DNA from: Isurus oxyrinchus
Lineage: Eukaryota
Direction: 5' to 3'
Assembly (NCBI GenBank): GCA_026770705.1
Contig: JANJGN010000071.1
Coordinates: forward strand, 1,240,001 to 1,304,000
Length of the DNA stretch: 64,000 bases
A model generated the notes under the pieces. The model was not told the DNA's origin, ran no database searches, and saw only the letters and a program-made list of their open reading frames with translations. Positions 1-50,786 of this stretch are shown here, one piece after another. The number at the start of each line of letters is the position of its first letter. Position 1 is the stretch's first letter. The translations under genes were made by a program, and so were the position numbers.

Positions 1-7
1 GTCTCTC

Positions 8-27070: not shown

Positions 27071-27814
27071 CCTCCCTGTGTTTGTACTCAATCCCTCGAT
27101 TTATGAAAAGCTTATTCTTTCCATCAGCACAAACAGCAATTTCCAAGCGGACTCCCATCAGCAGACAGAGTGCAATGAAACATCGGCATGCCTGCTTCTT
27201 AATGTACGGAGAGAAACCTGGAACGAGAGATTCTCCTTCTTCTCCTCAGCAAGCTGAAACTTTTCCTTATACCTGGTGCTCCCCAGTCCTGCTGTGTGGA
27301 CACATCATAACCACGGCATTGTCTGGCTGTGTGCAGCCAACATGGTCGAATAGGAATGAACAGAAATGTGACATTGCTAAACTCTGTTCTCTGATTGGAA
27401 TGTGCTTTCTGAATGCTGCACCTTTTTCATGCTGCAATAGATTGTAAGAAGCATTTGGGTTATGAATAAAATTACATTGATTAACACAAGTGATTAAAAT
27501 GCTCAGGCTGTTCTGTAGATATTTAAAGATTAAAATTCTTGTTTTGCTGCAAAATACTTGGCTCAAAGACATTACTTCATATTGTCATGTTTTCCAATCA
27601 GATGAATTCCTCTGTCCATCTTTATAATAGAAATTTCCAATGTAAACATGTCACATTGTAGCTGCACACACTTGCCAGTGGCTGGTGTGATATCAAAGCT
27701 GTCTTGCTGTCGAGAAACAGCGAGAAATATTCCTGTTGTGTGCATGAACTTCATGTTAGCATGAGACACAGGCATCAGATACAATTTTGTGCAATTTGTA
27801 CAATGTTCTTTAGA

Positions 27815-28362
27815 CAGCGGAGCACTCCCTCAGTACTGACCCTCCAACAGTGCTGCACTCCCTCAGTTCAGACCCTCCTACAGTGCAGCACTCCCTCAGA
27901 TCAGACCCTCCGACAATGCAGCACTCCCTCAGTTCAAACCCTCCGACAGTGCAGCACTCCCTCAGTTCAGACCCTCCGACTTTGCAGCACTCCCTCAGTT
28001 CAAACCCTCAGACAGTGCAGCACTCCCTCAGTTCAGAACCTCCGACAGTGCAGCACTCTCTCAGTTCAGACCCTCCGACAGTGCAGCCCTCCCTCATTTC
28101 AGACCCTCCGACAGTGCAGCACTCCCTCAGTTCAGGCCTCCGACAGTGCAGCACTCCTTCAGTTCAGACCCTCCGACAGTGCAGCACTCCCTCAGTTCAA
28201 ACCATCCGACAGTGCAGCACTCCCTCAGTTCAAACCCTCCGACAGTGCAGCTCTCCCTCAGTTCAGAGCCTCCGACAGTGCAGCACTCCCTCAGTTCAGA
28301 CCCTCCGACAGTGCAGCACTCCCTCAGTACTGAACCTCCGACAGTGCCGCACTACCTCAGTA
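27815..28362. repeat. 33-bp minisatellite array (reverse orientation)
   Basis: cagtgcagcactccctcagttcagaccctccga units. Confidence 0.95.
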
Positions 28363-29869: not shown

Positions 29870-31830
29870 CCAATCAATCGGGCTGCTTTGTCCTGGATGG
29901 TGTCAAGCTTCTTGAGTGTTGTTGGAGCTGCACTCATCCAGGCATGTGGAGAGTATTCCATCACACTCCTGACTTGTGCGTTGTAGATGGTGGACAGGAT
30001 TTGGGGAGTCAGGAGGTGAGTTACTGTCTGCAGGGTTCCCAGCCTCTGACCTGCTCTTGCAGCCACAGTGTTTATATGGCTGGTCCAGTTCAGTTTCTGC
30101 TCAATGGTAACTCCCAGGATGTTGATATTGGGGGATTCAGTGATGGTAATGCCATTGAATGCCAAGGGGCGATGGTTATGAATGGTCTGTGGGATATTCT
30201 GGTACAAAATGTCAACACTCGGACTCCAGATGCAATATTCAAGTGGTTCCTTTATTAGGCATGTGGGGAGCAAATGCTGAGCAGTCCAGGCGCTTCTCCA
30301 CCGAAGTTCAAATGAGCACAGTTTATATATTTTTTACTCTCAGTTACAAGGTAATGGTATTAGTTAGACAAAGGCCACAGCACAATGACCCTCCGGTGGG
30401 CTGATAATTGTGTTCTTGTACAGTAATTACAGGGCAGAGACTGGCTATTGTCCTTTTGAGACAGCAAAGAATCTATGTTTGTTCGATACAAAAGGTTTCC
30501 GGAGGCTGACTGGATGTGGTTCAAGGCCATCGGACGGTGTGAAATAACCTTCCCCAATTCTTGATTGAGTCACCCTGTGTCCTTGTGTGTGTGTCTCCCA
30601 TTTCCTCATTGCAAATTTCCAGCTGAGCCCTCTGTACAGGTTTTTAGCTTTCACGTAAGGATGTGATTGTCTGTGTACGCTTTGTCACCCTAGCTGCTGG
30701 TCCTGGCTGGCTCTTTAAAATAAATCCAAATTTTCTGCGCCTTCAGTTAGATTCTCTCTTGTTGGAGCTGGTCATTGCCTGGCACTTGTGTGGCATGAAT
30801 GTTACTTGTCACCTGTCAGCCCAAGCCTGGATGTTGTCCAGGTCTTGCTGCATTTGGACATAACTTGCTTCAGTATCTGAGGAGCCATGAATGATGCTGA
30901 ACATTCTGCAAACATCAGCAAACATCCCCACTTCTGACCTTATGATGGAAGGAAGGTCATTGATGAAGCAGTTGAAGATGTTTGAGCCTAGGACACTACC
31001 CTGAGTAACTCCTGCAGTGATGTCCTGGAACTGAGATGATTGACCCCCAATAATCACAACCATCGTCCTTTGTGCTGGGTATGACTCCAAGCAGCGGAGA
31101 GTTTTCCCCCGATTCCCATTGACTCCAGTTTTGCTCGGGCTCCTTGTTTTGCCACACTCAGTCAAATGCTGCCTTGATGTCAAGGACAGTCACTCTCACC
31201 TCACCTCTGGAGTTCAGCTCATTTGTGCATGTTTGAACCAAGGCTGTAATGAGGCCAGGAGCTGAATGATCCTGGTGGAACACAAACTGAGCGTCAGTGA
31301 GCAGGTTCTTGGTAAGCAGGTGCTGCTTGCAAGCGCTGTTGATGACCCCTTCCATCACTTTAGTAATGATCAAGAATAGACTGCTGGGGAATTGGCTGGG
31401 TTGGATTTGTCCTGCTTTTTGTGTACAGGACGTACCCCATAGCCGGGTAGTTGCCAGTGTTGCAGCGGTACTAGAAAATTCCAGAAAAGCTTGGCTAGGG
31501 GCGCAGCAAGTTCTGGAGCACAAGTCTTCAGTACTATTGCCGGAATAATGTCAGGGTCTGGAGCATTTGCAATATCCAGTGCCTTCAGCCCTTCCTTGAT
31601 ATCACGTGGAATTAATCGAATTGGCTAAAGATTGGCATCTCTGATGCTGGGGACCTCCGGAGGAGGCCGAGATGGATCACCCACTCAGCACTTCTGGCTG
31701 AAGATTGTTGCGCATGCTTCAGTCTTGTCTTTTGCACCGATGTGCTGGGCTCCTCCATCATTGAGGATGGGGATATTTGTGGAGCCTCCTCCTCCAGTGA
31801 GTTGTTTAATTGTCCACGACTGGATGTGAC
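29870..31830 (-). mobile_element. Degenerate LINE RT (CR1/L2-like) with an internal insertion
   Basis: GVTQGSVLG..IFNCFINDL...MFAD and ILGVTIEQKLNWTSHIN...IYNAQVRSVMEY. Confidence 0.85.
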
Positions 31831-33819
31831 ATCTGGAATGCGAAGCTAGTCTCAGTAATGGTGACCATGAAACTAAGGCCAATTGTTGCAAAAACCCATC
31901 TGGGTCACTAATGCCCTTTGGGGAAGGAAACCTGCCGTCCTTACCCATTCTGGCCTACGTGTGACTCCTGACCCACAGCAATGTGGTTGACTCTTAACTG
32001 GCCCCTGAAATGGCCGAGCAAGCCACTGAGTTATATCAAAACCCGCCACAGACCAGTCAAACCAGGTGAACTGCAGCACTTCGAAAAGGCAGCTCAGCAC
32101 CCCCTTCTCAAGGGGTCAGTCAGGAACAGGTAACAAACGCTGTCCACATCCCGTGAAAGAATTTTGGTAAAAAGGTAGCCGTGTATCACCACCCACGGCC
32201 AGCGCCAACCCCCCCACCCCTACCTGATTGCACCAGTTTCAGATTACACCAGGTCAATGAACGGATAGAAACCCAAACCAATGAGATGAGCACAGAGAAG
32301 GATCAAGCCAGAGAGAGTTGGTGGGAAGAATTGGGAAAGCAACAAAAAAGGCAGAGCGGACACTAACACTATAACAAAGTAAAGACCAGAGGAGGAAGGA
32401 AGCAAGTGCGAAGAGGAATTGAGAGCAGAGCTGGTAGGCTGCTTGTCGAAGCCAAGGAACCTCCATAGGGCACATCCACAGTGCTGTTGGGGAGGGTGAT
32501 ACATCATTTTGACCCAGGATCATCAAGTGTTGCACTGGCAGAGCCTTTAAAGAAAAGGGACCTTCACTACCCGTGTCCCCCGCCCTACAAAGCTGTTGAC
32601 CTGCTGAGTCCACCTGTACAGGCAGCCTCCAGACAGTTGACTACAGAGGCCATTGCAGCTGCTGAATATGACTTCCAGTTTCAAACCCTTCATGAATGCA
32701 AGGATGGAGAATTCAGCAGGAATATTCCTGCACACCCTGTGGCAGATCCTGTAAATAAAAGGGACCTTCACTCACTCCCCAAAGCTGCTGTCCTGCTGAT
32801 TCACATCTACAGGCAACCTCCAAATAGTCAACTAGAGAAGACAACGCAGCTGCTGAATGTGACTCCTAGTTTTAAACCCTTCACTCTGGAAAGAAGGAAT
32901 CCAGAGCAATGGCCTCAGTATGATTCTTCACAGAAACTGATTTTAAATCTCATGTCTAAGTATTATTTTTCCTTTGCTTACATTTTAATCCCTGCACCTG
33001 ATGGCTTTATCGCTTCAACTTAAATAACTTTCAGCAGGAGCCAGGTTCAAATTGAATGGACAAGCTGGCTTGGGGGGCCAAAAGGCCTACTCCTGCTTCT
33101 GTTTATTTATGTTGGTGTTGTTATGTAGTGGAACTAGAGAGGTTATAGCAGTTATGAGAACATTAAGCAAACAGCAGCAAGAATTGAACACCTACGTTGT
33201 GGTTTATGAAAAGGTTTTCAACCTGGTCAACTGGTAAAATCTGTTGAAAGTGGGCTATCATGGCGTGTGCCCTTTGTGAGATATTTGTAACAACGTTCTC
33301 GATGTCGGAACAGCTTGCATTGAACAAAGCTGATCTTTACCCAGAACTTCAGAGGAACGGGGGACAATTGTTCCCTGGTGTGGGGGGCATGGTGGGGGGG
33401 GAGGGTGAGGGAGAGACAAGTAGCCTGAAATACCAAGCCAGACACTTTGTGAAGACAAAAGTTGTTTATTCATTTTTTTTCACAAATCATAATCTTTACA
33501 ATTAAAGTCCCGACAAGATAATGGTGAATCATGAACACATTGTCGGGGTGAATCTGTGCCCGGGAGCATAAAGCAGCAAAATCAGGAGCCCGCTTTACAT
33601 CTCTCTGAATTTTAACTATCATTAACCCCAGTAACATCCATTCAAATGACTTAGTCATAAGATTCCTCACACATTCACTTGCACACTCACACACCCACAC
33701 CCACACAGACACACTGACACACTCACTCATTCACATTGACACACACTGACACAGTCACACACACCCACACAGACACACTGACACACTCACTCATTCACAT
33801 TGACACACACTGACACAGT

Positions 33820-33852
<33 letters not shown>

Positions 33853-34305
33853 ACGCTGACACAATCACACACATTCACATTGACACGCACTGACAGTCAC
33901 ACATACACACACACACGCTGACACAATCACACACATTCACATTGACACACACATATTGACAGTCACACACACACGCTCATAAAGACAGACACAAACACAG
34001 TCACGTGAGGTGAATAGTGTCGATGTATTTAAGGGGAAGCTGGATAAACACACGAGGGAGAAATGAATAGAAGGATATGGTGATGGGGTGAGATGGAGAA
34101 GGGGTGGGCGGAGACTCGTGTGGAGCAGAAACTCCAGCATGGAACAGATGGGCCGAATGGCTTCTTTCCCTGCTGTAAAACGCAGGTAAAGTTTCAGTTG
34201 GAATTACTGAACAGGGCCTGTGTTAAGTAGATTGCTAAGCAGTAGATAAGGAGGGGAGAGGCTGTGGCATGGTGCAGGATGACCTTGCGTGAATGAGGCC
34301 AGGGT

Positions 34306-34422
34306 CTAATATCTACAGCAGAGACCACAAGTCTCATTTGGTTCTCTCCAATTACAGCAGTTACAGCAGAATCTGCAGAGCTGCTGTCTGCCCATTCTCT
34401 TCTGGCGCTGCAGCAAGGAGCC
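34306..34422 (-). CDS. HAMP: Hepcidin exon 3 (furin site and mature peptide)
   Basis: Acceptor cctgcttttccag; RQKR; CRFCCNCC...CGLCCRY TAG; candidate AATAAA at 33465-33470 on the minus strand. Confidence 0.95.
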   Translation of the reverse strand, partial: GSLLQRQKRMGRQQLCRFCCNCCNWREPNETCGLCCRY

Positions 34423-37400
34423 CTGGAAAAGCAGGAGGACAATAGGTGAGAACATTCCGGAAAGAAAGAAGGCATCATTTCAATCAAGCGCGTCATTGGA
34501 AGGAGGATGGCGCAATTCTATAGCGCCTTTCCCCTCCTCAGGATGGCCCAAAGTGTTCCACAGCTGAAGGAAGGACTTTTTCTGAAGTGAGCTCACCGCT
34601 GTAATGTAGGAAACGCAGCAGGCAATTCACGCACAGCAAGATCCCACAAACAGAAATGTGATAATGGCCCCGATTTTCAGTTTTTTACCAATGTCAGTTG
34701 AGGGATAAATGTTTGCCCCAGGAAAGCAGACATAACTGCATCCCATCCACCCCGCACCACCCCCTCCACACATACCCCCAACTCATGACGCACTTCATTT
34801 AAATTGTGGTCATGGAATCCTCTACATCCATCTGAGAGGGCAGATGTTGTCTCAGTTTAACATCTCATCTGAAAGACAGCGCCTTCAACAGTGCAGCACC
34901 CCCTCAGTACTGACCCTCCGACTGTGCAGCACTCCCTCAGTACTGACCGTCTGACAATGCAGCACCCCCTCAGTACTGACCCTCCGACTGTGCAGTCCCC
35001 CGCCGGTACTGACCCTCTGACAGTGCAGCACTCCAAGACTGACCGTCTGACAATGCAGCACCCCCTCAGTACTGACCCTCCGACTGTCCTGCCCCCCCGC
35101 CGGTACTGACCCTCCGACAGCTCGGTAATTTCTCAATTACGCCTGGTGGTCCTTTTAATTCAGAGCTGAGAGTTGCAGAGAATCGAGCAGACACCCTGAA
35201 CTGACACTTGCAGTGCAAGTACTGGGAGCGCGCTGGTCATTATCATGCTGCTGTCTGTGGGATCTTACTGTGCGCCAATGGCTGATTCTTTTCCCACAGT
35301 ACATCAGTGACCTCACATGAAAGAAAGAAAGCACTTGATTGTCTGCGAAACAGTTTGGGACGTCCTGATGTGTTGGAAGGCGCTAGAGAAATGCAAGAGT
35401 TGACGTTTCGAGTCCTCATGACCCTTCTGAGGACTCGAAACGTCAACTCTTTTCTTCTCCGCCGATGCTGCCAGACCTGCTGAGTTTTTTCAGGTAATTC
35501 TGTTTTTGTTTTGGATTTCCAGCATCCGCAGTTTTCTTTGTTTTTATAGAGAAATGCAAGTCCTCTTTGTCTTTCACTGGATCCTCTAAGGTGTCTGTTG
35601 ATTAACCAGCCTCTCGGTGTATGATGTAGGCCTGGTTATAAACAGTTAGAAGGATCAAATATCAAAAGTGCTTTGGCTGACAGTCAAACCGATTGTGCAT
35701 TCGGAGAGATTAGATACGGTCTGCGCACAATGACTCCAGTCTCTGGCACTGACTGCCGCCTGGGGTCTCCCTTCCACATAACACTCACAACTTGCATTTA
35801 CACAGCGCCTCTGCCATTGCAAAATGTCCCAGCCCACATTACCGGAGCGTAAATCAGAGAGAAGTCTAACACTGAGTCACATATGGAGATATTAGGTGAC
35901 CAAAAGCTTGGTCATAGATGTCAGTTTTTAAGGAGCATCTTAAAGGAGAGAGAGAGAGAGAGGCAGAGAGGTTAAGGGAGGGTATTCCGGAGCTCAGGGC
36001 CCCAGGCAGCTGAAGGCACGGCCACCAATGGTGGAGCGATGGGAATCAGGGGGACCCGGGAGATGCAGGAATTTCAGAGATTTTGGAGGAACATCGGGAC
36101 CGGAGGAGGTGTTCTCCTGCTCCATATCTCTCTCTCTCTTCCTCTCATCCACTCCTCCTCTCCCTGTCTCTCTCTCTCCTACTCTTCCGCTCAATTGCCC
36201 TCTCTCCCAATCTTTCTCTCCTCTCTCCCTTTTCCTGTCTCTCTCCCTCTCTCTCTCCCCTGTCTCCTTCTCCCACTCTGTATCTCTCCCTCTCTCTCAC
36301 ACTATTTTTGTACCTTTCGCTCACTCTGTAACTCTCCCTTTCCTGTTAATTTCTCTCTCTTGGACAATCTCTCTTCCCTTTTCACTTTCCCTCACTCTGC
36401 ATCTCTTCTTTAATTTCTCCCTCTGTCACTCTCTCCCACCTATGTTCTTTCCCTTTCACCCCTCCCCGTCCCACTCTCTGTCTCTCTCTTCCAATCCCTC
36501 CCTCCCTCATTCCATCCCTCTCTCCGACTCTCGACTCCCAGCCTCTCTTTAACCCACTCCCAGGCTGGATCAGTCTCCCTCTCACTATTCCCGGCGTGGG
36601 TTACATTTAAAATTCCTGTGGGGATATGTTCAGTTCCTTGGAATTGCCTCTTCCCAGCTTTGCAAAAAAAAGGGGGCGGCGGGGGGCTCGATTTCAAACA
36701 TGCCTCCTGAGTATAACCGAGACAGACTGCCACTGAAATCAGCTTGAAATCAGAAAACTTTCTGTGGAAGAAACGAGCAGGGAGAAACCTTAAAATAAGG
36801 AATGAATTTCCACCTACCGTGTCCGGGGAATCCACAGATTTCTCAATCGTCGAAGAACCTAAAGCAGTGTCAACCTGCAAAAAGAAAGAATTTATCAGGG
36901 AGAAAGTGAGAGGAGGATTGAGGGAGAGGGAGAGAGAGAGAGAGAGGTACAGGAGAGAGAGGGGGAGGAGGACAGACTTGCATTTCTCTAACGCCTTTCA
37001 CCACATCCCAAAGCATTTCACAGCCACTGAAGGATGTTTTTGAAGTGCACTCACACTGTAGGAAATGTGGCAGCTGATTTGTGCACAGCAAGATCCCACA
37101 AATAGCAATGTGATCATGGCCTAGATCATCTGTTTTTGGTGATGTTGGGTGAGGGATAAATATTGGTCCCAGGACACCGGGGAGAGCACCCCCTGCTCTT
37201 CCTCCAAATAGTGGCTGTGGGATCTTTCACACCCGCCCGAGAGGGCAGACGGGGGACTCAGTTTAATGTCTCATTCAACATTGTTGTGCTCCCTCAGTAC
37301 TAACCCTTTGACACTGCAGCACTCCCTCAGTACTAACCCTTCGATAGTGCTGCACTCCCACAGTATTGTCCCTCCGTCAGTGCAGCGCTCCCTCAGTACT

Positions 37401-38832
37401 GACCCTCCGACAGTGCAACACTTCCACAGTACTGACCCTGTAACAATGCAGCACTTCCTCAGTACTGACCTCCGACAGTATAGCACTCACTCAGTACTGT
37501 CCCTCCAATAGTGCAACACTTCCACACTACTGACCCTCTGACAGTGCAGCACTCCCTCAGCACGGAGTGTTGACCGACGTTATGGGACTGAATTCCCTGG
37601 AGTGAGACTCAGACCAGAGATTTAGGTAGGGTTGTTCCGGCTGGAGGAGGTTACAGAGATAGGGAGGGTTGTAGAGGCTGTAGGAGGTAACAGAGATAGG
37701 GAGGATTCTAGAGGCTGTAGGAGGTTACAGAGATAGGGAGGGTTGTAGGGGCTGTAGGAGGTTACAGAGATAGGGAGGTGAGTAGGGGCTGTAGGAGGTT
37801 AAAGAGATGGGGGGGTTGTGGGGGCTGGAGGAGGTTACAGAGGTAGGGAGGGTTGTAGAGGCTGGAGGAGGTTACCAAAATAGATACTGTTGTAGGGGCC
37901 ACAGTAGGTTACAGAGATAGGGAGAGTTATAGTGTGGAGAGGACGTTATAGAGTTCATGAGCATTGTAGGGGCTGGAGGAGGTTACAGTGATTCTGAGGG
38001 TCGTGGGGCCTGGAGGAGGTTACAGAGATAGGGAGGGTTGTAGGGTCTGGAGGAGGTTACAGAGATAGGGAGGGTTGTAGGGTCTGGAGCAGGTTACAGA
38101 GATAGGGAGGGTTGTAGGGTCTAGAGGAGTTTACAGTGATCATGAGTGTTGTGGGGCCTGGGGGAGGTTACAGAGATAGGTAGGGTTGTAGGGGCTGGAG
38201 GAGGTTACAGAGATAGGGAGGTTTATAGGGGCTGGAGGAGGTTACAGAGATAGGGAGGGTTGTAGGGGCTGGAGGAGGTTACGGAGATAGGGAGTGTTGT
38301 AGGGGCTGGAGGAGGTAACAGAGATAGGGACAGTTGTAGGGGCTGGAGGAAGTTACAGAGATAGGGAGGGTTGTAGGGGCTGGAGGAGGTTACAGATATA
38401 GGGAGGGTTGTAGCGGCTGGAGAAGGTTACAGAGATAGGGAGGGGTGTAGGAGCTGGAGGAGGTTACAGAGATAGGGAGCGGTGTAGGGGCTGGAGGAGT
38501 TTACAGAGATAGGGAGGGTTGTACGGGCTGGAGGAGGTTACAGAGATAGGGAGTCGCTGAGGAGGGATTGAAAACAAGAATGAGAATTTCAGGGGAAATG
38601 ACAGAAGGAAATGATGTTAAATTCATAGAGGGCGACAATATTAAAGGCACGAACATAATAATATCAAACTGCGGAAGTGACCAGTCTATCTGGGTGGTGG
38701 ACGTAGAGTCATGTGCAAGAAACACCTCACCCAGAGGGACATCTCTTAGCTTACCCTCGACAAGGAGAAGAAGTGACTCAGCTGCAGGGAGAGCAGCAAA
38801 GTCAGAGTGAACAAGACAAGTCGCCATTTCAT
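34306..38832 (-). CDS. HAMP: Hepcidin-family antimicrobial/iron-regulatory peptide precursor, 3 exons, 83 aa (88 aa from the ATG at 38847)
   Basis: Exons 38832-38755, 36874-36818 and 34422-34306, all phase 0 with GT-AG: MKWRLVLFTLTLLLSLQLSHFFSLSR|VDTALGSSTIEKSVDSPDT|GSLLQRQKR-MGRQQLCRFCCNCCNWREPNETCGLCCRY*. Signal peptide, furin site and the 8-Cys CxxCCxCC...CGxCC pattern are all present. Confidence 0.92.
34885..35120. repeat. 33-bp minisatellite in hepcidin intron 2
   Basis: Tandem units; forms the end of the inverted duplication. Confidence 0.9.
35398..35546. mobile_element. Penelope-like short insertion with a 14-bp TSD (tagagaaatgcaag)
   Basis: TSD at 35384-97 and 35547-60; absent from the inverted copy at ~46435. 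Confidence 0.85.
36818..36874 (-). CDS. HAMP: Hepcidin exon 2 (prodomain)
   Basis: ttctttctttttgcag|...ACG|gtaggt; 57 nt, phase 0-0. Confidence 0.85.
37640..38552. repeat. 37-bp minisatellite (ggaggaggttacagagatagggagggttgtaggggct) in hepcidin intron 1
   Basis: More than 20 tandem degenerate units; a reverse-strand piece at 39297-39408. Confidence 0.95.
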
Positions 38833-38847
38833 CTGGGAGCTTCCCAT
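38755..38847 (-). CDS. HAMP: Hepcidin exon 1 (signal peptide)
   Basis: (MGSSQ)MKWRLVLFTLTLLLSLQLSHFFSLSR, then AGG|gtaagc. Confidence 0.85.
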
Positions 38848-38918: not shown

Positions 38919-39130
38919 CTTATACCTGAAACACTTGAAGGGGACAGCCGCGGGTGGGTTGCTGTGTGGTATCACACCCATTTCTGGATATTGCAGTGTC
39001 GATGTTCCCTGTCCCACTGGCCTGGGACCAGCAGTAAGGTCACTGGGACATTGACTGTCTGGCGCCGAGAACTATCAGTCCCTCCGCAACGCCCTTCACC
39101 TTGTGCAAATATGTGTTCATATTGACGCAA
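38919..39130 (-). promoter_or_regulatory. Hepcidin proximal promoter: TATA, BMP-responsive GGCGCC, C/EBP-like sites
   Basis: TATAAG (minus) at 38919-24; GTCT-GGCGCC at 39057-66; TTGTGCAA at 39101-08; TGACGCAA at 39123-30. Confidence 0.55.
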
Positions 39131-40089
39131 CACAACATAGCAAAAACATAGGGGCTGGTTCTTATGTCGGCAAATCAGGTGAACCGCACGCCCCCTAACC
39201 CCTTACTCCTCTCATTGCTACACTTACTATTTTACAAATTGTGTGCGTTGCTTTTATTTTGGACAAGGGGCCTGGAGGGGGAACTGATTTACATTTTGTA
39301 ACCTCCTCCAGCCCCTACAACACTCCTTATCTCTGTAACCTCCTCCAGCCCCTACAACCCTCCCTATCTCTGTAACCTCCTCCAGCCCCTGTAACCCTCC
39401 CCATCTCTTGAAGGGTTCTCAAAATTTCCAACTGTCAAGGAACCCTGGGTTGGTGAGCGTGACCCCTGACCTCTCCTAGTGCAATTTAGTTAGGGTTTGG
39501 GGGTGGGACAAGGGTAAGGGCATTAGTAGCGTGATTCTCCCTCGTTATGCCGGTTGTTCCCCAGACTTAACTCAGTGTACTTTGTAAGTCTGTATAATCT
39601 CAGTGTCATCCTAATGTTAGAAGTTCATTTGTGACTTCAGTAAACTCAGTTTTTGTCTTGCACCAAAACCAGTTGTCTGCTGCACTTTGTGACAAGCCCC
39701 GAATAAGTCCAAGGTCTAGAACCCAGGGAGTGGGAGCGATTCAGACGGCTCAGAAGTCGCAGGTGAAGCTGACACACACCACCACACCCTACAAGGGGCT
39801 GAATGGCCTCCTCCTGTTCCTGTGTAATGGGCTTCAGTGGCTGAATGGCCTCCTCCTGTTCCTGTATAACGGACATAAGTGGCAGAATGGCCTCCTCCTG
39901 TTTCTGTGTAACAGTCTTGAGGGGGCTGAATGGCCTCCTCCAGTTCCTGTGTAACAGTCTCGAGGGGGCTGAATGGGCCTCTTCCTGTTCCTGTGTAACA
40001 GGCTTGAGGGGGCTGAATGGGCCTCTTCCTGTTCCTGTGTAACAGGCTCAAGGGGCTGAATGGCCTCCTTCTGCACTGTAAACTTGTTG

Positions 40090-41436
40090 TGATACTGTAA
40101 CTGCCTCTTTGGTTTCATTCAGCTGAATCTTCAGCTCTTCAGTCTCTTCCTTGTATCTCTTGCCTTCCTCCTGGAACATTGGACATGGTTGGGTCTTCCC
40201 TGCCAACTGTTTCTTCAGTTTGCTCAGAGCGGCACAGAATTCGCTTTCTTTCTCTTCAGGATTTTCCAGTGGAACCAACTCTGACCTGAGGGACACTTGC
40301 AGCCTGTGAGGATGCTTCAATTCTTCAAACTCATTCCGAGATACACTCTCATATTCCCCCAGCAACTCAGCAACTCCTCCAGTGAAACATTTCAGAGCAG
40401 CTGAGCTTGGTTTTCTGGAACCAGTCTCGGCCCAGAAGACTAGGGCCCTCACCTGTCGCTATGATCACTGGAAGCTGGGCTGTCTGCTGCCTGTAGGACA
40501 CAGGTACTGGGATGAGGTCCTTTCCCTGTATGGATTCTCCAGTGTGTGTCTTCAGCTGATCCATTGTTTGCTCTAAATTCAGCATCTGGGTTCCTTCATT
40601 TAGCTGTTTAAATGTGGGCTCTTCCACCACTGTGTCTGAGGCTCCCGTATCTGCCCCATTACTAGTGGCTGCCCATTCACTTGGGTTGTGATGGTTATAG
40701 GTTCAGTTTTTACCACTGTGACATTGGACAGGGAATAGACATCGGTATCAGCAGCTTCAGGCTCTGTGATATTATTCACTTCCATCATGTTGGTGCACTG
40801 TCTGATGGGCTGTCTCGATTTCACCCTGCATTGCTTTATTACCTGCCCCTTTCTTGTGGCAGTGATGGCATTCTGCCCCCTTGAACCTGCAGGTGTCCAG
40901 TACGTGCTCAATGCCCCCCACATCGAGAACAGGCCAACTTCGGAGTTGCTGCTGAAATACTCCCACGAAGCCTTTTAGTTTCTGGAGCGGCAGAGACTGT
41001 CTCTCGCTTGGCGGCTGTCTCTCTCCCTCTCTCTCCAGTTTGAGCCTCACGCCCGGTGGTTGTTTCCTGTCCCAGCTGAGGACTGGCGCCATGTTGTACA
41101 TCCTGTAAATCTCGCCAGTCTCTCCCAGCACTTTCCATGCCTGGCGCTATTTCCATGGTGCGCTTCAAATCGATGTCGGCTTCTGCGAGTAAACGGCTCT
41201 GAATGGCGTTGGGGTGAACGACACAAACCAATCGGCCCCGCAACATGTCATTGAGTGTGTCTCCGAGGTCCCAGTGCTCAGTCACCTGCTTCCACTTCAC
41301 TGTATAGGTTGCGATGGACTCTCCCTGGGCCCTTACTCTGGAGTTAAACTTAAACCTTTTCATTATTACCCACGGCTTCAGCTGAAAACACATCTTCATG
41401 AGGTCGACTAATTGGTGAAAAGATTTAGAATTGGGT
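40090..41436 (-). mobile_element. Ty3/Gypsy gag-protease fragment, degenerate, no LTR at the 5' junction
   Basis: KSF.QLV.L...PWVI.KRFKFN.R...GESIA...LNDMLR.RLVC; CxxC zinc-knuckle remnants; VNGQP.../PSLLGRDW. Confidence 0.85.
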
Positions 41437-42592
41437 GTAATACACGTCACTGTCTTCAGCTCTGAGACTGTCAATCCTCACCGAACAATTCTTCCCTTCC
41501 AAGTCGCCGATTATTTTAGCACGTCCCACGAATGTGGCCATCCCATAGTTGGGATCTTTGGTATATGTGATGATATATTTCCATCTATACCAATATTTAT
41601 ACCAAGCTCCGTGCAGTGCTGTGTAAGAGTGGGAAGGAAAGTCAAAGCTACACGGAATAACCACACAAGAGCTGCTGATGGCCCTCCGAGGCAGCGCCTT
41701 CATAGACCATTCCTCTGACGTCACTCCTGAAAGGCAACAAGGGAGGGGACTGAACATCAAAAAGCAGAATATTACTTCAATTGAGAGAGTCTACAGAATG
41801 CGGTACAGAGGGATCTGGGTGTCCTTGTACATGAATCACAGAAAGTCAGCATTCAGGAACAGCACGGAATGAGGAAGGCAAGTGGAATGTTGGCCTTTAT
41901 TGCAAAGGGATGGAGTATAAAAGGAGGGAAGTCTTGCTACAACTGTACAGGGCGTTGGTGAGATTGTATCAGGAGCAGTGTGTACAGTTCTGGTCTCCTT
42001 ACTTAGGGAGGGATAGACTCTGCATTGGAGGCAGCTCAGAGGAGGATCACTGGGCTGATTCCTGGGATGAAGGGGGTTTGTCCTGTGAGGAAATGTTGAG
42101 CAGGTTGGGCCCTGTATCCATTGGAGTTTAGAAGAATGAGAGGTGATCTTATTGAAACATATAAGATTCTGAGGTGGTGGGGGGTTTGACAGGGTGGATG
42201 CTGAGGGGATGTTACCCCTTGTGGGGGAATCCTGTGAAGCAATAAGGATGTTTTACTGCATTAAAGGTGCTGTATAAATGCACTGTCATTCCTATTGAAA
42301 CAAGCTCTCTGATGCACAAACAGAAAATGCTGGAAAAACTCAGCAGGTCTGACAGCATCTGTGGAGAGAGAAACAGAGTTGGTGTTTCGAGTCCGTATGA
42401 GACTTTTGCTTTTGCTATATTCTCTGACTTGCTATTCACTCACTCTCTGTGTGATCACTAACCCTGTTCTCTAAAATTAAATGTTCACTTCCTCACTCCA
42501 GGAAAGAATCCAATTCCCTGAGTTCCGATCAGTAATGAATTTGTACCTTGCAGCAAGCTGATGAAGATCAGTATCAGACCGACCTCTCCCAT
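41437..42592 (-). pseudogene. Divergent MAG/Siglec-like gene D: leader exon plus V-set exon truncated at the F strand
   Basis: Leader 42592-42547 MGEVGLILIFISLLQ G|gtacaa. V exon from 41726: GVTSEEW...SCVVIPCSFDFP...HGAWY...GDLEGKNCSV...AEDSDVYY, then gag sequence. Confidence 0.85.
41790..42230 (+). mobile_element. CR1-type LINE 3' fragment
   Basis: EYKRREVLLQLYRALVR..LE.CVQFWSPY-like peptide. Confidence 0.8.
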
Positions 42593-42859: not shown

Positions 42860-43950
42860 CTCACAATCTCTATCTATCGCACTCTTCTGCTCTATCTCTC
42901 TCTCTCACACACACATTCTCTCTCTAACACTCACAATCTCTCTCTATCACACTCTTCTGCTCTCTCTCTCTCTCTCACACACACACATTCTCTCTCTAAC
43001 ACTCACAATCTCTCTCTATCGCACTCTTCTGCTCTATCTCTCTCTCTCACACACACATTCTCTCTCTAACACTCACAATCTCTCTCTATCACACTCTTCT
43101 GCTCTATCTCTCTCTCTCTCACACACACATTCTCTCTCTAACACTCACAATCTCTCTCTATCACACTCTTCTGCTCTCTCTCTCTCACACACACACACAT
43201 TCTCTCTAACAAACACAATCTCTCTCTATCACACTCTTCTGCTCTCTCTCTCTCTCTCACACACACACATTCTCTCTCTAACACTCACAATCTCTCTCTA
43301 TCGCACTCTTCTGCTCTATCTCTCTCTCTCACACACACATTCTCTCTCTAACACTCACAATCTCTCTCTATCACACTCTTCTGCTCTATCTCTCTCTCTA
43401 TCGCACACACATTCTCTCTCTAACACTCACAATCTCTCTCTATCACACTCTTCTGCTCTATCTCTCTCTCACACACACACACATTCTCTCTCTAACACTC
43501 ACAATCTCTCTCTATCACACTCTTCTGCTCTATCTCTCTCTCTCACACACACACCTTCTCTCTCTAACACTCACAATCTCTCTCTATCACACTCTTCTGC
43601 TCTATCTCTCTCTCACACACACACACATTCTCTCTCTAACACTCACAATCTCTCTCTATCGCACTCTTCTGCTCTCTCTCTCTCTCACACACACACTCTC
43701 TCTCAAACACACACTGTCAGAGGGTCAGTACTGAGGGAGTGCTGCACTGTCAGAGGGTCAGTACTGAGGGAGTGCTGCACTGTCAGAGGGTCAGTACTGA
43801 GGGAGTGCTGCACTGTCAGAGGGTCAGTACTGAGGTAGTGCTGCGCTGTCAGAGGGTCAGTAGTGAGGGAGTGCTGCACTGTCAGAGGGTCAGTACTGAG
43901 GGAGTGCTGCACTGTCAGAGGGTCAGTACTGAGGGAGTGCTGCACTGTCA
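42860..43950. repeat. ~60-bp CT/CA compound tandem repeat followed by a 33-bp minisatellite (43712-43950)
   Basis: Direct inspection. Confidence 0.95.
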
Positions 43951-44720
43951 GAACTGTCGTAATTCAGATGATGTTTGAAATTAGCAACATGCCTCGTGTA
44001 ACATTCTATATCATCAGCTCAATATAACCAGATTAGTCTTGTACGTTTCACTTCACTGCAAATTGTTCATGGTTTCATTTCCTTGTTAACCAGGCTCATG
44101 TGATCACTATTTTTAAATAATGTTTGTTATTTGGAACAAGGGGCCATGCCTGAACAGATAACTGTAGGATCAAGCAGCTGGGTTTTTTCTTGAACCTTAC
44201 TTCATTCTGTTGTTTGCTGCTGGACATGAGATCATTAATGTGTGAATGTAGAATCGAAGTCACCTCAGTGAACAGCAGCATTGGTTGAACAGCCTGATCT
44301 GCAATAAGAACTGCTGAACACAATGTCCATTCAGAACAGCTCGGTCCCCGATCAGAGAAACAGCCTCAGACAGAACCAACTGACGCTGGAATCCATACAA
44401 TTCATCAACGTGTTGGGAGTTAGTTTGATGTCGGAGATGGAGTGTTACTGGGAAGGAGGGAACCCGTCAGGATGAACAGCTCGATGTACGACAAGGAAAG
44501 GATGAGCTAAGAGGGGTTGGTCACGGACAGACGGAGCGTGTGAAGACTCAACAAGCTAATGGCAGGTGAAGAGCTGGAAAGGTGTCTTTTCAACACAAGG
44601 TTTAGACACAGAACTCGATGTTTGATCGGGTATTTCAAACCAGAGAAACTCTTTACAGGGTGAATGGACCTTGTCAATAATCCATCCAGCCAACCTCGCC
44701 TGGAGATTAGTCCAATATTA

Positions 44721-46915
44721 GACACTAAACCGAGACCCCCGTCTGCCCTCTCGGGCGGGTGTGAAAGATCCCACAGCCACTATTTGGAGGAAGAGCAGGG
44801 GGAGTTCTCCCCGGTGTCCTGGGACCAATATTTATCCCTCACCCAACATCACCAAAAAGCAGATGATCTAGGCCATGATCACATTGCTATTTGTGGGATC
44901 TTGCTGTGCACAAATCAGCTGCCACATTTCCTACAGTGTGAGTGCACTTCAAAAACATCCTTCAGTGGCTGTGAAATGCTTTGGGATGTGGTGAAAGGCG
45001 TTAGAGAAATGCAAGTCTGTCCTCCTCCCCCTCTCTCTCCTGTACCTCTCTCTCTCTCTCTCCCTCTCCCTCAATCCTCCTCTCACTTTCTCCCTGATAA
45101 ATTCTTTCTTTTTGCAGGTTGACACTGCTTTAGGTTCTTCGACGATTGAGAAATCTGTGGATTCCCCGGACACGGTAGGTGGAAATTCATTCCTTATTTT
45201 AAGGTTTCTCCCTGCTCGTTTCTTCCACAGAAAGTTTTCTGATTTCAAGCTGATTTCAGTGGCAGTCTGTCTCGGTTATACTCAGGAGGCATGTTTGAAA
45301 TCGAGCCCCCCCCAACTTTTTTTTGCAAAGCTGGGAAGAGGCAATTCCAAGGAAGTGAACATATCCCCACAGGAATTTTAAATGTAACCCACGCCGGGAA
45401 TAGTGAGAGGGAGACTGATCCAGCCTGGGAGTGGGTTAAAGAGAGGCTGGGAGTCGAGAGTCGGAGAGAGGGATGGAATGGGGGAGGGAGGGATTGGAAG
45501 AGAGAGACAGAGAGTGGGACGGGGAGGGGTGAAAGGGAAAGAACATAGGTGGGAGAGAGTGACAGAGGGAGAAATTAAAGAAGTGATGCAGAGTGAGGGA
45601 AAGTGAAAAGGGAAGAGAGATTGTCCAAGAGAGAGAAATTAACAGAAAAGGGAGAGTTACAGAGTGAGCGAAAGGTACAAAAATAGTGTGAGAGAGAGGG
45701 AGAGATACAGAGTGGGAGAAGGAGACAGGGGAGAGAGAGGGAGAGAGACAGGAAAAGGGAGAGAGGAGAGAAAGATTGGGAGAGAGGGCAATTGAGAGGA
45801 AGAGTAGGAGAGAGAGAGACAGGGAGAGGAGGAGTGGATGAGAGGAAGAGAGAGAGAGATATGGAGCAGGAGAACACCTCCTCCGGTCCCGATGTTCCTC
45901 CAAAATCTCTGACATTACTGCATCTCCCGGGTCCCCCTGATTCCCATCGCTCCACCATTGGTGGCCGTGCCTTCAGCTGCCTGGGGCCCTGAGCTCCGGA
46001 ATGCCCTCCCTTAACCTCTCTGCCTCTCTCTCTCTCTCTCCTTTAAGACGCTCCTTAAAAACTGACATCTTTGACCAAGCTTTTGGTCACCTAACCCTAA
46101 TATCTCCATATGTGACTCAGTGTTAGACTTCTCTCTGATTTACGCTCCGGTAATGTGGGCGGGGACATTTTGCAATATCAGAGGCGCTGTGTAAATGCAA
46201 GTTGTGAGTGTTATGTGGAAGGGAGACCCCAGGCGGCAGTCAGTGCCAGAGACTGGAGTCATTGCGTGCAGACCATATCTAATCTCTCCGAATGCACAAT
46301 CGGTTTGACTGTCAGCCAAAGCACTTTTGATATTTGATCCTTCTAACTGTTTATAACCAGGCCTACATCAAACACCGAGAGGCTGGTTAATCAACAGACA
46401 CCTTAGAGGATCGAGTGAAAGACAAAGAGGACTTGCATTTCTCTAGCGCCTTCCAACACATCAGGACGTCCCAAAGTGTTTCGCAGACAATCAAGTGGTT
46501 TTTTTCTTTCATGTGAGGTCACTGATGTACTGTGGGAAAAGAATCAGCCATTGGCGCACAGTAAGATCCCACAGACAGCAGCATGATAATGACCAGCGCG
46601 CTCCCAGTACTTGCACTGCAAGTGTCAGTTCAGGATGTGTGCTGGATTCTCTGCAACTCTCAGCTCTGAGTTAAAAGGACCACCAGGCATAATTGAGAAA
46701 TTACCGAGCTGTCGGAGGGTCAGTACCGGCGGGGGGGCAGGACAGTCGGAGGGTCAGTACTGAGGGGGTGCTGCATTGTCAGACGGTCAGTCTTGGAGTG
46801 CTGCACTGTCAGAGGGTCAGTACCGGCGGGGGACTGCACAGTCGGAGGGTCAGTACTGAGGGGGTGCTGCATTGTCAGACGGTCAGTACTGAGGGAGTGC
46901 TGCACTGTCAGAGGG
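44721..46915 (+). pseudogene. Inverted partial duplicate of the hepcidin gene (intron 1 end, exon 2 at 45118-45174, intron 2)
   Basis: Reverse complement of ~34885-37270; exon 2 identical with intact splice sites; exons 1 and 3 not seen. Confidence 0.9.
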
Positions 46916-47404
46916 TCAGGGCTAAGGGAGTGCTGCACTGATGGAGGGTCAGTACTGAGTGAGTGCTGCACTGTCAGAGGGTCAGTGCTAAGGGATTGCT
47001 GCACTGTTGGAGGGTCAGTACTGAGTGAGCGCTGCACTGATGGAGGGTCAGTTCCGAGGGAGTGCTGCACTGTCAGAGGGTCAGTGCTAAGGAAGTGCTG
47101 CACTGTCAGAGGGTCAGTGCTAAGGAAGTGCTGCACTGTACAGAGGGAGTGTGAGACTGACAGAGGGTCAGTAATGAGGGAGTGTGAGACTGACAGAGGG
47201 TCACTATTGAGGATGTGCTGCACAGTCGGGGGGGTCAGTACTGAGGGAGCACTGCACTGCCATAGGTGGTTTCTTTCAGATGACATGAGAGAGAGGGTTA
47301 AACCCACTGAGACAAGACTGACACTAATGAGGCTGCTCAATAATTTAACCCTATCAGTGCCAGTAAATAATGTGAGGATGTCTTCTGTTTCCATTTCTCT
47401 GTAG

Positions 47405-48890: not shown

Positions 48891-50338
48891 GTACAGGAGC
48901 TGTTTACACTCACTCCAAAGCTTCTATCTCAGTGTGTAGACAACACATGTCCCAGATTCCCAGCCAGGTTACCCACTGATTTGTACCTGTGGAGTCAGCA
49001 ATGGTTCAGTATCATGCTGTCTCTCTGTTATGTCACAGCAACTGGTAAAGGCTGTTGTTTAAAATCCCAGAGGGAAACTTTAAACAACTGTCATAACCTA
49101 TATTTCCCAGTGGAATGTTTGAGATGCAGCTCTAAATTCAGGAATAAGACCATCAGTTCTTGAGATGGGTTTATATCAAACTACATGAGACATTTATTAA
49201 TTTTCACAAGTTAATCATATGCACATGGCTACAAGCTAGTACTATCATAACTTTTTAACAAATTCCCAAACTAACGTCCTCTAAGACAACCCATAGACTT
49301 TAAGCAGATTCCAAGCGAAGCATTTTCACCTCACAAATTCCAAATGAGGTTCCTTTCACTTTGGTTCCTTTGCAGACAGGTGTAGGCTTACAGCTGCTTT
49401 GATGTTACAAGCCTCTGCTCTGCACACACAAAACTGCTCAAGTTATACCCAGCTCTTCTCTTTGAATGTAAATTCTCATTGTATCATCAGGACCTTTGAT
49501 CTCCATCTCTTCTAACTATAAATCCCGTTTCATAGTATCAATTTTATTAGTAATATAAACATTGATTGGTTTAAGAATTCACTCCCAGGCTTTGAATCCT
49601 CCTTTTAAAAATGCAATATGCCTCTTTACCTCTTTGTTTACATCTCAAAACTACTATACATAAAAGTACCCAGACCGGCTGGCTTTAATCCAATTAAAAC
49701 ACACACACACACACCCACAGACTAAACCTCTGTTTAAAAAGACAATTTCCAATTACAATACATACATTAATAGATTCATAACGCTCAGTCTCTGACCCTT
49801 CATCTCTCTCTCTCTCTCTCAACCTCTCTCTGATTACAAGATTCATGTTATTGAGCCTCACACCAGGCACCTGAGTGCAGAATCCAAGCCGACACTCGCC
49901 AGAGCCATTACCGAGGGAGTGCGAGACTGACAGAGGGTCAGTACTGAGGGAGTGCTGCACTGTCAGAGGGTCAGTACTGAGGGAGTGTTGCACTGTCAGA
50001 GGGTCAGTACTGAGGAAGACCTGTACTGTCGGAGGGTCAGTACTGAGGGAGCGCTGCACTGCTGGAGGGTCAGTACTGAGGGAGCGCTGCACTGTCGGAG
50101 GGTCAGTACTGAGGGAGTGCTGCACTGTTGGATGGTCAGCATTGAGGAAGTGCTGCACTATCGAAGGGTCAGTACTGAGGGAGCACTGCACTGCCATAGG
50201 TGTTTTCTTTCATAAGACATGTGAGAGAGGGTTAAACCCACTGACCCACGACTGACACTAACGAGGCTGCAGAATATTTTAACCCTATCAGTGCCAGTAA
50301 ATGATGTGAGGATGCCTTCTGTTTCCATTTCTCTGTAG

Positions 50339-50587
50339 GGTAAACAGAACGTGCTGATTACTGAGCCCCGGAACACAACCAGAGACACAACTAGCGAGGG
50401 GGAGACCCCAGCTCCCCAGGGTGTCTCTGAATGTGCAGTGGGAGGCAATGCTGGACATGGGAACCCCGACAATCCTGACGAGTTTCTCTACGCCAATCCC
50501 CAAGTCTTCAGGGTGCCCAGTGGTGATGGGTCTGTCCACAGGGAAGAGCAGACGGAATACGCACAGATCAGATTCAAGAGAAACTGA
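50339..50587 (+). CDS. Siglec-like terminal cytoplasmic exon (copy 3): FLYANP and TEYAQI
   Basis: Open phase-0 frame to TGA. Confidence 0.78.
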   Translation, partial: GKQNVLITEPRNTTRDTTSEGETPAPQGVSECAVGGNAGHGNPDNPDEFLYANPQVFRVPSGDGSVHREEQTEYAQIRFKRN

Positions 50588-50786
50588 GCGTGAAAAAGGC
50601 AGAGGTGGTCAGGAGGTTTGTGGATGGTGGCAGGGATGAAGATTCTTGGGAACATGAGACAACCCACTGGGGGAGAGGGGGAGAGAGGGAGGAAGGGACT
50701 GAATGGGTCTGTGGTTGGTGTGGTTTGGAATGAAATGTTTCCCCAGTGACGACTTGATGCTGAGTCATTGGGGACAGAGATTCAGT

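What the first reader, a model, noticed from the sequence alone, without database searches (positions are those of the whole stretch)
34306..34395. Atypical mature hepcidin: no His-containing N-terminus, doubled hairpin loop with an N-glycosylation sequon
The predicted mature peptide is MGRQQLCRFCCNCCNWREPNETCGLCCRY (29 aa). Iron-regulatory hepcidins begin DTHFP or QSHLS, the segment needed for ferroportin binding and ATCUN metal binding, and have about 4 residues between Cys5 and Cys6. Here the N-terminus is MGRQQL and the loop has 8 residues (NWREPNET) including N-E-T and two acidic residues. This suggests a neofunctionalised paralogue (antimicrobial or with another target), possibly glycosylated.
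Basis: partly seen in the sequence, partly recalled or inferred. Interest (0 to 1): 0.8.

Follow-up and report, generated by a model that had tools for sequence, protein, structure and literature searches.

The report
Diverged copy of shark hepcidin
This is a real, intact three-exon hepcidin gene in a shark genome: its long loop is normal for shark hepcidins, but the receptor-binding start and the basic loop of the conserved shark hormone have been replaced, so it is probably a side-branch copy and not the iron hormone.

Summary
Minus-strand 34395..34309 encodes MGRQQLCRFCCNCCNWREPNETCGLCCRY directly after an RQKR furin site. It is the last exon of an intact 31+19+38-codon hepcidin gene, with Pfam Hepcidin at 30.7 bits against a cut-off of 27.

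Annotated hepcidins of basking shark and two catsharks also have 29-residue peptides with an 8-residue loop, and they carry a canonical MSHLS[V/I]C start. So the "doubled loop" is the normal shark form.

What is unusual here:
- The start is MGRQQL, with no His3.
- The loop is acidic, not strongly basic.
- NET arose beside a conserved Thr.
- Signal and pro-region are 52/59 identical to the basking-shark protein, but the mature peptide only 12/29 (p=8e-6). All 8 Cys are kept (p=1e-4).

I read it as a diverged, selectively maintained copy, like teleost Hamp2 in function but of shark origin. It is probably not the ferroportin hormone. Glycosylation is possible but doubtful.

The scan has noted many near-identical copies of this gene elsewhere in the same genome. 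Those notes are untested here.

The parts
38919..38924 (-). TATA-like box (TATAAG), 77 nt upstream of the start codon
   Evidence: motif scan; sequence. Function inferred.
39057..39066 (-). GGCGCC followed by CAGAC, a BMP-responsive-element/SMAD-box-like motif at -219
   Evidence: This is a motif match only. A single GGCGCC in 650 bp is not far from chance.
38755..38847 (-). Exon 1 coding part: 31 codons, signal peptide MGSSQMKWRLVLFTLTLLLSLQLSHFFSLSR, Kozak GCAGAGATGG, donor AGG|GTAAGC
   Evidence: 94% identical to residues 1-31 of Cetorhinus XP_078389754.1.
36875..38754 (-). Intron 1 (1880 nt), mostly a ~37-nt minisatellite and SINE-like tandem repeats
36818..36874 (-). Exon 2: 19 codons, VDTALGSSTIEKSVDSPDT (pro-region), acceptor TTTTTGCAG|G, donor ACG|GTAGGT
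   Evidence: (84% to Cetorhinus residues 32-50)
34423..36817 (-). Intron 2 (2395 nt).
34309..34422 (-). Exon 3 coding part: 38 codons, GSLLQRQKR plus the 29-residue mature peptide; acceptor CTTTTCCAG|G; stop at 34306-34308
34396..34407 (-). Furin-type propeptide cleavage site R-Q-K-R. R-x-[K/R]-R followed by Met is conserved in all shark homologues.
34378..34395 (-). N-terminal six residues MGRQQL, in place of MSHLS[V/I]. There is no His3. R-M-G-R also makes a minimal second furin motif.
   Evidence: The role of the first six residues in ferroportin binding comes from PMC9882908.
34330..34353 (-). Hairpin loop NWREPNET (8 residues) containing the sequon N-E-T (34330-34338)
44717..46947 (+). 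Inverted partial duplicate of the gene (part of intron 1, exon 2 copy at 45118-45174, most of intron 2), 97-98% identical, with no exon 1 or exon 3

Best explanation
The stretch is the mature-peptide exon of an intact three-exon hepcidin-family gene, lying in a Siglec-like gene array of a shark, probably a lamniform. What the sequence shows: a TATA-box promoter, a strong Kozak start, two GT-AG introns and a precursor of 31+19+38 codons. What is inferred: the signal peptide takes the precursor into the ER, eight cysteines form the four-disulfide hepcidin hairpin, and a furin-type convertase cuts after RQKR to release a 29-residue peptide. A further cut at RMGR would give a 26-mer starting with Gln. 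The scaffold, including the 8-residue loop, is the ordinary shark hepcidin scaffold. This copy has replaced the ferroportin-contacting start (MSHLS[V/I] to MGRQQL, losing His3 and the hydrophobic residue 4) and six of the eight loop residues (basic to acidic). It has kept every cysteine, Gly24, the cleavage site and the reading frame. I therefore read it as a diversified, selectively maintained paralogue type. In function it would be analogous to teleost Hamp2, which does not regulate ferroportin, but it arose within the shark hepcidin lineage. It most likely has weak or no ferroportin-occluding activity and serves host defence or another secreted-peptide role. N-glycosylation at N20 is possible but more likely absent or partial.
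For: Family membership: Pfam Hepcidin is above its cut-off and the only PDB matches are hepcidins. Gene model: each exon aligns to exactly residues 1-31, 32-50 and 51-88 of annotated 88-residue shark hepcidins, with canonical splice sites and Kozak context. Shark reference form: Cetorhinus maximus XP_078389754.1, Scyliorhinus canicula XP_038670190.1 and S. torazame XP_072325013.1 all carry MSHLS[V/I]C and an 8-residue basic loop. Their mature peptides are 26/29 identical across two orders, while their prepro regions are 38/59. Inverted pattern here: prepro 52/59 against mature 12/29 identical to Cetorhinus, Fisher p=8e-6. The 17 changed sites miss all 8 Cys, p=1.2e-4. Functional inference: the first six hepcidin residues contact ferroportin and the C-terminal carboxylate binds its metal (PMC9882908). 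Sea bass Hamp2, which lacks QSHLSL, does not regulate ferroportin (PMC5665920). Over the Cys core this peptide matches bass hepcidin at 15 of 20 aligned residues.
Against: No function was tested. The N-terminal segment keeps the canonical length (6 residues), Leu6, Cys7 and Phe9, and two residues follow the last Cys pair as in other hepcidins, so residual ferroportin binding cannot be excluded. Net charge (+2) is lower than that of the canonical shark peptide (+5), which does not favour a membrane-active antimicrobial role. No AATAAA or ATTAAA lies within 838 nt of the stop. I could not show that a canonical MSHLS copy exists in this same genome. DNA of relatives was unavailable, so dN/dS and gene conversion were not tested.
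Confidence: 0.6

Rival explanations
1. It is still an iron-regulatory hepcidin. It would bind and occlude ferroportin like the canonical form, the N-terminal changes being tolerated by, or co-adapted with, the shark ferroportin.
For: The N-terminal length is the same (6 residues before Cys1). Leu6, Cys7 and Phe9 are retained, and the loop length and C-terminal spacing match the canonical shark peptides. A GGCGCC-CAGAC motif of the BMP-responsive type lies at -219. The gene occupies the HAMP-type position beside Siglec/MAG-like genes.
Against: S2, H3, L4 and S5, which are invariant in the three canonical shark peptides and shared with sea bass Hamp1 QSHLSL, are all replaced, and position 4 becomes polar. 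The mature peptide evolves much faster than the prepro region, the opposite of the hormone-like pair. The promoter motif is close to chance level.
Confidence: 0.2
2. It is a non-functional by-product of segmental amplification: a transcribed or silent copy drifting towards a pseudogene.
For: The locus is a ~49-kb repeated unit. A truncated inverted copy carrying only exon 2 lies 6 kb away. There is no canonical poly(A) signal within 838 nt. Earlier scan notes, untested here, report sister copies with splice or frame defects.
Against: The ORF, both introns' GT-AG sites, the Kozak context, the furin site and all eight Cys are intact despite 17 of 29 replaced residues. The chance of sparing the Cys is 1.2e-4.
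Confidence: 0.12
3. On origin rather than function: exon 3 represents an ancient second hepcidin lineage with a CRFCCNCC-type core as in teleosts. Its 5' exons and introns would have been homogenised with the canonical gene by gene conversion inside the array, so it is not a recent duplicate under strong positive selection.
For: Seventeen replacements in 29 codons stand against about 10% divergence in the neighbouring exons, and 8% in a TE-derived exon downstream. For recent divergence that would need an extreme rate. The core CRFCCNCC, the PN and the CCR[F/Y] match bass hepcidin and sea bass Hamp1/Hamp2 better than they match the canonical shark core CVYCCGCC.
Against: The peptide is too short for a reliable tree. 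The 8-residue loop, N15, T22 and the Met start are shared with the shark canonical form, not with teleosts. No DNA of relatives was available to test for conversion tracts.
Confidence: 0.3

Closest known systems
Canonical long-loop shark hepcidin (Cetorhinus maximus XP_078389754.1; Scyliorhinus canicula XP_038670190.1 'hepcidin-2-like'; S. torazame XP_072325013.1 'hepcidin-1')
   Same: 88-residue precursor with identical exon boundaries. Signal peptide 94% and exon 2 84% identical to Cetorhinus. R-x-[K/R]-R then Met, a 29-residue mature peptide, the same Cys spacing and an 8-residue loop beginning with N and ending with T.
   Different: The start is MGRQQL in place of MSHLS[V/I], so there is no His3. 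The core is CRFCCNCC in place of CVYCCGCC. The loop is WREPNE in place of [K/R]KG[T/S]KK, taking the mature peptide from net +5 to +2 and creating an N-E-T sequon. The tail is CGLCCRY in place of CGYCCKL. Only 12/29 mature residues are identical.
Teleost Hamp2-type hepcidin (bass hepcidin PDB 1S6W; sea bass Hamp2, PMC5665920)
   Same: No SHL motif. The core CRFCCNCC, the PN in the loop, CG-x-CCR plus an aromatic residue are shared: 15 of 20 aligned residues. It belongs to a multi-copy, fast-evolving mature-peptide family. Bass hepcidin also has a sequon (N-M-S) at the aligned loop position.
   Different: It is not an orthologue, because its prepro region is of the shark hepcidin type. The loop has 8 residues against 5. 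Six residues precede Cys1 and they are different ones. Antimicrobial activity is untested.
Human hepcidin-25 (PDB 1M4F, 6WBV)
   Same: Pfam family, eight-Cys frame, six residues before Cys1, Phe9, a furin-processed last exon, and a gene next to Siglec-family genes. The human HAMP-MAG-CD22 adjacency is from general knowledge.
   Different: No His3 or ATCUN motif, polar residue 4, and a loop of 8 against 4 residues.
Short-loop catshark hepcidin (Scyliorhinus canicula XP_038669797.1)
   Same: It also lacks His at position 3 (MTNHSI). Its loop residues N-R-E-N occur in the same order within NWREPNET. It has the highest exon-3 identity of the set, 53%.
   Different: 4-residue loop, an 84-residue precursor and a CVYCCGCC core.

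Membership tests
Hepcidin family (Pfam PF06446) | Profile match above the curated cut-off | tested here: met
   30.7 bits against a cut-off of 27, E=4e-7
Hepcidin family (Pfam PF06446) | Eight cysteines spaced C-x2-CC-x-CC-xn-C-x2-CC at the C-terminus of the precursor | tested here: met
   n=8, as in other shark hepcidins
Hepcidin family (Pfam PF06446) | Three-exon gene, ~84-90-residue prepropeptide, R-x-[K/R]-R convertase site directly before the mature peptide | tested here: met
   31+19+38 codons, GT-AG introns, RQKR
Hepcidin family (Pfam PF06446) | Four-disulfide beta-hairpin fold | tested here: inconclusive
   The AlphaFold2 model on a 4-sequence alignment had mean pLDDT 55.9 and was helical, so it is unusable
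Iron-regulatory (HAMP1-type) hepcidin | N-terminal x-[S/T]-H-[L/F]-[S/P]-[I/L/V]-C segment with His3 (ATCUN) | tested here: not met
   MGRQQLC here. It is MSHLS[V/I]C in three shark species and QSHLSLC in sea bass Hamp1.
Iron-regulatory (HAMP1-type) hepcidin | Mature peptide more conserved than the prepro region (hormone-like constraint) | tested here: not met
   12/29 against 52/59 identical to Cetorhinus (p=8e-6). The canonical pair shows 26/29 against 38/59.
Iron-regulatory (HAMP1-type) hepcidin | Binds ferroportin and causes its occlusion or internalisation; induced by iron/BMP | not testable with these tools
   Only a GGCGCC-CAGAC motif at -219 was found
Teleost Hamp2-type antimicrobial hepcidin | Membership of the teleost hamp2 clade (orthology) | tested here: not met
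   The prepro exons are 84-94% identical to a shark hepcidin. The resemblance to bass hepcidin is confined to the Cys core.
Teleost Hamp2-type antimicrobial hepcidin | Direct antimicrobial activity and no ferroportin regulation | not testable with these tools
   Net charge is +2, counted. No assay was possible.
N-glycosylated secreted peptide | N-x-[S/T] sequon in the lumenal part | tested here: met
   N20-E-T22 at 34330-34338. T22 is conserved in the long-loop shark hepcidins.
N-glycosylated secreted peptide | Sequon actually occupied | not testable with these tools
   The site lies 9 residues from the C-terminus and within a Cys-rich fold. Extreme C-terminal sites need STT3B, and disulfide formation limits STT3B access (PMC6683751; PMC4137057).

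The most novel reading that the evidence does not exclude
Sharks evolved their own second hepcidin class, independently of teleost Hamp2. It would be an acidic-loop, possibly N-glycosylated peptide that no longer acts on ferroportin. It would have been amplified together with Siglec receptor genes in a ~49-kb repeating unit and might be functionally coupled to them, for example as a sialylated glycopeptide ligand or as a co-regulated immune effector.
Probability: 0.1. Interest if true: 0.7.

Novelty: new variant of a known kind. Interest (0 to 1): 0.38.

Why it matters
Hepcidin is the master iron hormone of vertebrates. In teleosts it split into an iron type and a defence type. I found no paper in the searched library that gives a shark hepcidin sequence or tests its function.

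The comparison made here shows two things:
- The conserved SHLS-type shark hepcidin carries a hairpin loop twice as long as in bony vertebrates. Loop length is therefore free to vary in a probable ferroportin ligand.
- At least one shark lineage carries a further type. It keeps that scaffold but has rewritten the ferroportin-contact end and reversed the loop charge.

If the diverged type is expressed and inactive on ferroportin, two-type hepcidin systems arose more than once. That would give a natural experiment on which residues matter for ferroportin binding. If it is active, it would widen the known sequence tolerance of the hormone's N-terminus.

Tried and rejected
Searches and tools that gave nothing:
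- Word-index protein search with the exon-3 stretch found nothing.
- The exact 49-residue ORF is not in the 15-billion-protein collection.
- A full HMMER search of 1.84 billion representatives with the 38-residue exon-3 peptide returned one hit. It is a 577-residue repetitive artefact, not a hepcidin. A 38-residue query has little power at that database size, so this says nothing about absence.
- AlphaFold2 on the exon-3 peptide with 3 homologues gave pLDDT 56 and helices. I discarded it and ran no fold search.
That ruled out dN/dS and a gene-conversion test.
I stopped that step, took the identity counts by eye from alignments A1-A3, and passed only numbers to the statistics.
- The supplement of the nurse-shark plasma proteome paper has no hepcidin entry.

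The exons were handled one by one.

Readings considered and rejected:
- Chance ORF: rejected on Pfam and the exon-by-exon matches.
- Orthologue of teleost hamp2: rejected because the prepro region is shark-type.
- Loop length as a mark of neofunctionalisation: rejected because canonical shark peptides share it.

Full report
**1. What is in the sequence**

The minus strand of 34306-34455 is an ORF ending ...LLFQGSLLQRQKRMGRQQLCRFCCNCCNWREPNETCGLCCRY-stop. A six-frame scan of the whole 64-kb window for CC-x-CC finds this one place only.

The eight Cys are spaced C-x2-CC-x-CC-x8-C-x2-CC. The first six residues are MGRQQL. The loop is NWREPNET, with N-E-T at 34338..34330.

Pfam Hepcidin (PF06446) matches at 30.7 bits (cut-off 27, E=4e-7). 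The only solved structures matched are bass hepcidin 1S6W and human hepcidin 1M4F. Both alignments open a 4-residue gap opposite the loop.

**2. The gene**

| Part | Coordinates (minus strand) | Content |
|---|---|---|
| TATA-like box | 38924 | TATAAG, 77 nt before the ATG |
| Exon 1 | 38847..38755 | MGSSQMKWRLVLFTLTLLLSLQLSHFFSLSR, Kozak GCAGAGATGG, donor AGG\|GTAAGC |
| Exon 2 | 36874..36818 | VDTALGSSTIEKSVDSPDT, acceptor TTTTTGCAG\|G, donor ACG\|GTAGGT |
| Exon 3 | from 34422 | starts after CTTTTCCAG\|G |

All junctions are phase 0 and the coding exons hold 31+19+38 codons.

Each exon was aligned separately to annotated shark proteins. Each falls exactly on residues 1-31, 32-50 and 51-88 of 88-residue precursors. 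Local tblastn of those proteins against the window gives the same three blocks, at E=2e-14, 3e-8 and 4e-12.

One weak point: there is no AATAAA or ATTAAA within 838 nt after the stop, only an AATACA at +279.

**3. Relatives, and what they change**

The exon-3 stretch found nothing in the word-indexed protein search. The full HMMER search returned only a repetitive artefact.

A stop-free stretch around exon 1 did find relatives. It hit Cetorhinus maximus LOC144671611 (XP_078389754.1, 88 residues, Pfam Hepcidin). Searching with that protein found four more:
- Scyliorhinus canicula XP_038670190.1 ("hepcidin-2-like")
- S. canicula XP_038669797.1 ("hepcidin-2-like")
- S. torazame XP_072325013.1 ("hepcidin-1")
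- S. torazame GCB65323.1

Mature peptides after R-x-[K/R]-R compare as follows:

| Source | Mature peptide | Loop |
|---|---|---|
| Basking shark | MSHLSVCVYCCGCCNKKGTKKTCGYCCKL | 8 residues |
| Both catsharks | MSHLSICVYCCGCCNRKGSKKTCGYCCKL | 8 residues |
| Second S. canicula gene | MTNHSICVYCCGCCNRENCGFCCKH | 4 residues |
| This window | MGRQQLCRFCCNCCNWREPNETCGLCCRY | 8 residues |

So a 29-residue peptide with an 8-residue loop is the conserved shark form. It carries the S-H-L-S start that matches sea bass Hamp1 QSHLSL (PMC5665920) and has His at position 3.

The "doubled loop" is real relative to human and teleost peptides. Within sharks it is not atypical and is not linked to loss of the N-terminal motif.

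**4. What is unusual in this copy**

Against the basking-shark protein, by-eye counts from alignments A1-A3:

| Region | Identical |
|---|---|
| Exon 1 | 29/31 |
| Exon 2 | 16/19 |
| Pro-part of exon 3 | 7/9 |
| Mature peptide | 12/29 (only 4 of 21 non-Cys positions) |

- Prepro 52/59 against mature 12/29 gives Fisher p=8e-6.
- The canonical basking shark-catshark pair shows the reverse: prepro 38/59, mature 26/29 (p=0.012). That is what a constrained hormone should show.
- The 17 replaced positions spare all eight Cys (p=1.2e-4). They also spare Gly24, N15, T22, the Met start and the furin site.

This is diversification under a maintained scaffold, not decay.

The changes in detail:
- S2G, H3R, L4Q, S5Q and V6L at the start.
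- V8R, Y9F and G12N in the core.
- [K/R]KG[T/S]KK becomes WREPNE in the loop, taking the loop from net +4 to -1.
- The whole peptide goes from net +5 to +2.
- The N-E-T sequon arose by one replacement (K20N) next to the conserved T22.
- R-M-G-R creates a minimal second furin motif. If used, it would leave only Q-Q-L before Cys1.

Over the Cys core the peptide resembles bass hepcidin (CRFCCNCC, PN, CG-x-CCR plus an aromatic residue; 15 of 20 aligned residues) more than it resembles its shark sibling (11 of 23). I cannot tell convergence from an old lineage whose 5' exons were homogenised by gene conversion.

**5. Likely mechanism**

- Shown: family membership, gene integrity, the scaffold, and the pattern of divergence.
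- Inferred: ER entry, disulfide folding, furin cleavage and secretion.

Structures of ferroportin with hepcidin show that the first six hepcidin residues contact ferroportin and the C-terminal carboxylate coordinates its bound metal (PMC9882908). In sea bass, Hamp1 (QSHLSL...) regulates ferroportin and Hamp2 does not (PMC5665920).

Four of the six N-terminal residues that are invariant in canonical shark peptides are replaced here. His3 is lost and position 4 becomes polar, so loss or strong weakening of ferroportin action is the most likely outcome (about 0.6-0.7). Residual activity cannot be excluded, because the segment length, Leu6, Cys7, Phe9 and the C-terminal spacing are kept (rival, 0.2).

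A defence or other secreted role is inferred by analogy only. The reduced positive charge does not favour a classical membrane-active peptide.

On glycosylation, the sequon sits 9 residues from the C-terminus. Such sites depend on the post-translocational STT3B complex, and disulfide formation limits STT3B access in cysteine-rich domains (PMC6683751; PMC4137057). I put occupancy at roughly 0.25.

From memory, not tested here: native bass hepcidin, which has N-M-S at the aligned position, was reported with an unglycosylated mass.

**6. Context**

The gene lies among Siglec-type genes:
- V-set plus CD22-like first Ig exons lie at 9857-10321. Similar ORFs lie at 22545 and 58813.
- A V-set exon at 41428-41760 has sialoadhesin, Siglec-5 and MAG as its best solved relatives.

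The first 13.6 kb of the window recur at +49 kb with 92-95% identity, so the locus is a ~49-kb repeating unit.

A 2.2-kb inverted fragment of the gene, holding exon 2 and the flanking introns only, lies at 44717-46947.

The alternative 3' exons of the basking-shark isoforms X1 and X3 also exist downstream in this window, at 31161-31271, 22344-22511 and elsewhere. The two loci therefore share their architecture.

**7. Earlier scan notes**

Look-ups in the scan's own notes show this gene type was found many times on other DNA of the same genome. The notes state that it is multi-copy, strongly transcribed, and that a standard-looking hepcidin is also expressed.

I could verify only two things: that ordinary shark hepcidins are in public databases, and that the locus is a repeated unit. 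The rest is untested here.

**8. Limits and refusals**

Those letters were sent to no search afterwards.
- The AlphaFold model was unusable.
- No paper in the searched library prints the shark hepcidin core motif. The only functional hint is that hepcidin was detected in nurse-shark plasma (PMC9207270).

**9. Verdict**

This is a diverged variant within a known family. It has no described counterpart in the protein collections searched, and it is already met repeatedly in this genome by the scan. Interest is moderate.

Noticed in passing
window 44717-46947 (+), exon-2 copy at 45118-45174: An inverted partial duplicate of the hepcidin gene (part of intron 1, exon 2, most of intron 2), 97-98% identical to 34882-37274. 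It has no exon 1 or exon 3, so it is a gene fragment or an assembly artefact.
   Followed up: partly
window 1-13600 versus 49019-62800: The start of the window recurs about 49 kb downstream at 92-95% identity. The Siglec-like genes and the hepcidin gene therefore sit in a ~49-kb tandemly repeated unit.
   Followed up: partly
window 9857-10321, 22545-23021, 58813-59280 (+); 41428-41760 (-): These are Siglec-type V-set exons. The first matches Pfam V-set and the CD22-like first Ig domain. The one at 41428-41760 has sialoadhesin, Siglec-5 and MAG as its best solved relatives, and retroelement-like ORFs (40048-41474) follow it before the hepcidin promoter.
   Followed up: partly
window 31161-31271 (-); 22344-22511, 9665-9823, 58612-58779 (-): The alternative last exons of Cetorhinus LOC144671611 isoforms X3 (reverse-transcriptase-like) and X1 are also present downstream of the hepcidin gene here, at 81-92% identity. 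Read-through chimeric transcripts from hepcidin exons 1-2 may therefore occur in this genome too.
   Followed up: no
window 37600-38580 (intron 1); 34880-35120 and 37290-37566: Intron 1 is largely a ~37-nt minisatellite (CTCCCTATCTCTGTAACCTCCTCCAGCCCCTACAACC-like). SINE-like ~33-nt tandem arrays (CAGTACTGAGGGAGTGCTGCACTGTCGGAGGGT-like) flank it and recur across the window (1000, 27800-28360, 43700-43950, 46700-47290, 49900-50200).
   Followed up: no
window 39057-39066 (-): GGCGCC followed by CAGAC lies 219 nt upstream of the start codon. It resembles the BMP-responsive element plus SMAD box of HAMP promoters. No TTCNNNGAA STAT site was found in 650 nt. This is a motif match only.
   Followed up: no
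window 33660-33980: A long CA-rich compound microsatellite lies 330-650 nt downstream of the hepcidin stop. The first canonical AATAAA lies only beyond it, at 33470.
   Followed up: no
Scyliorhinus canicula XP_038669797.1 (P0005): The catshark has a second hepcidin with a short 4-residue loop (NREN) and an MTNHSI start (His at position 4, not 3). Sharks therefore have at least three mature-peptide types.
   Followed up: partly
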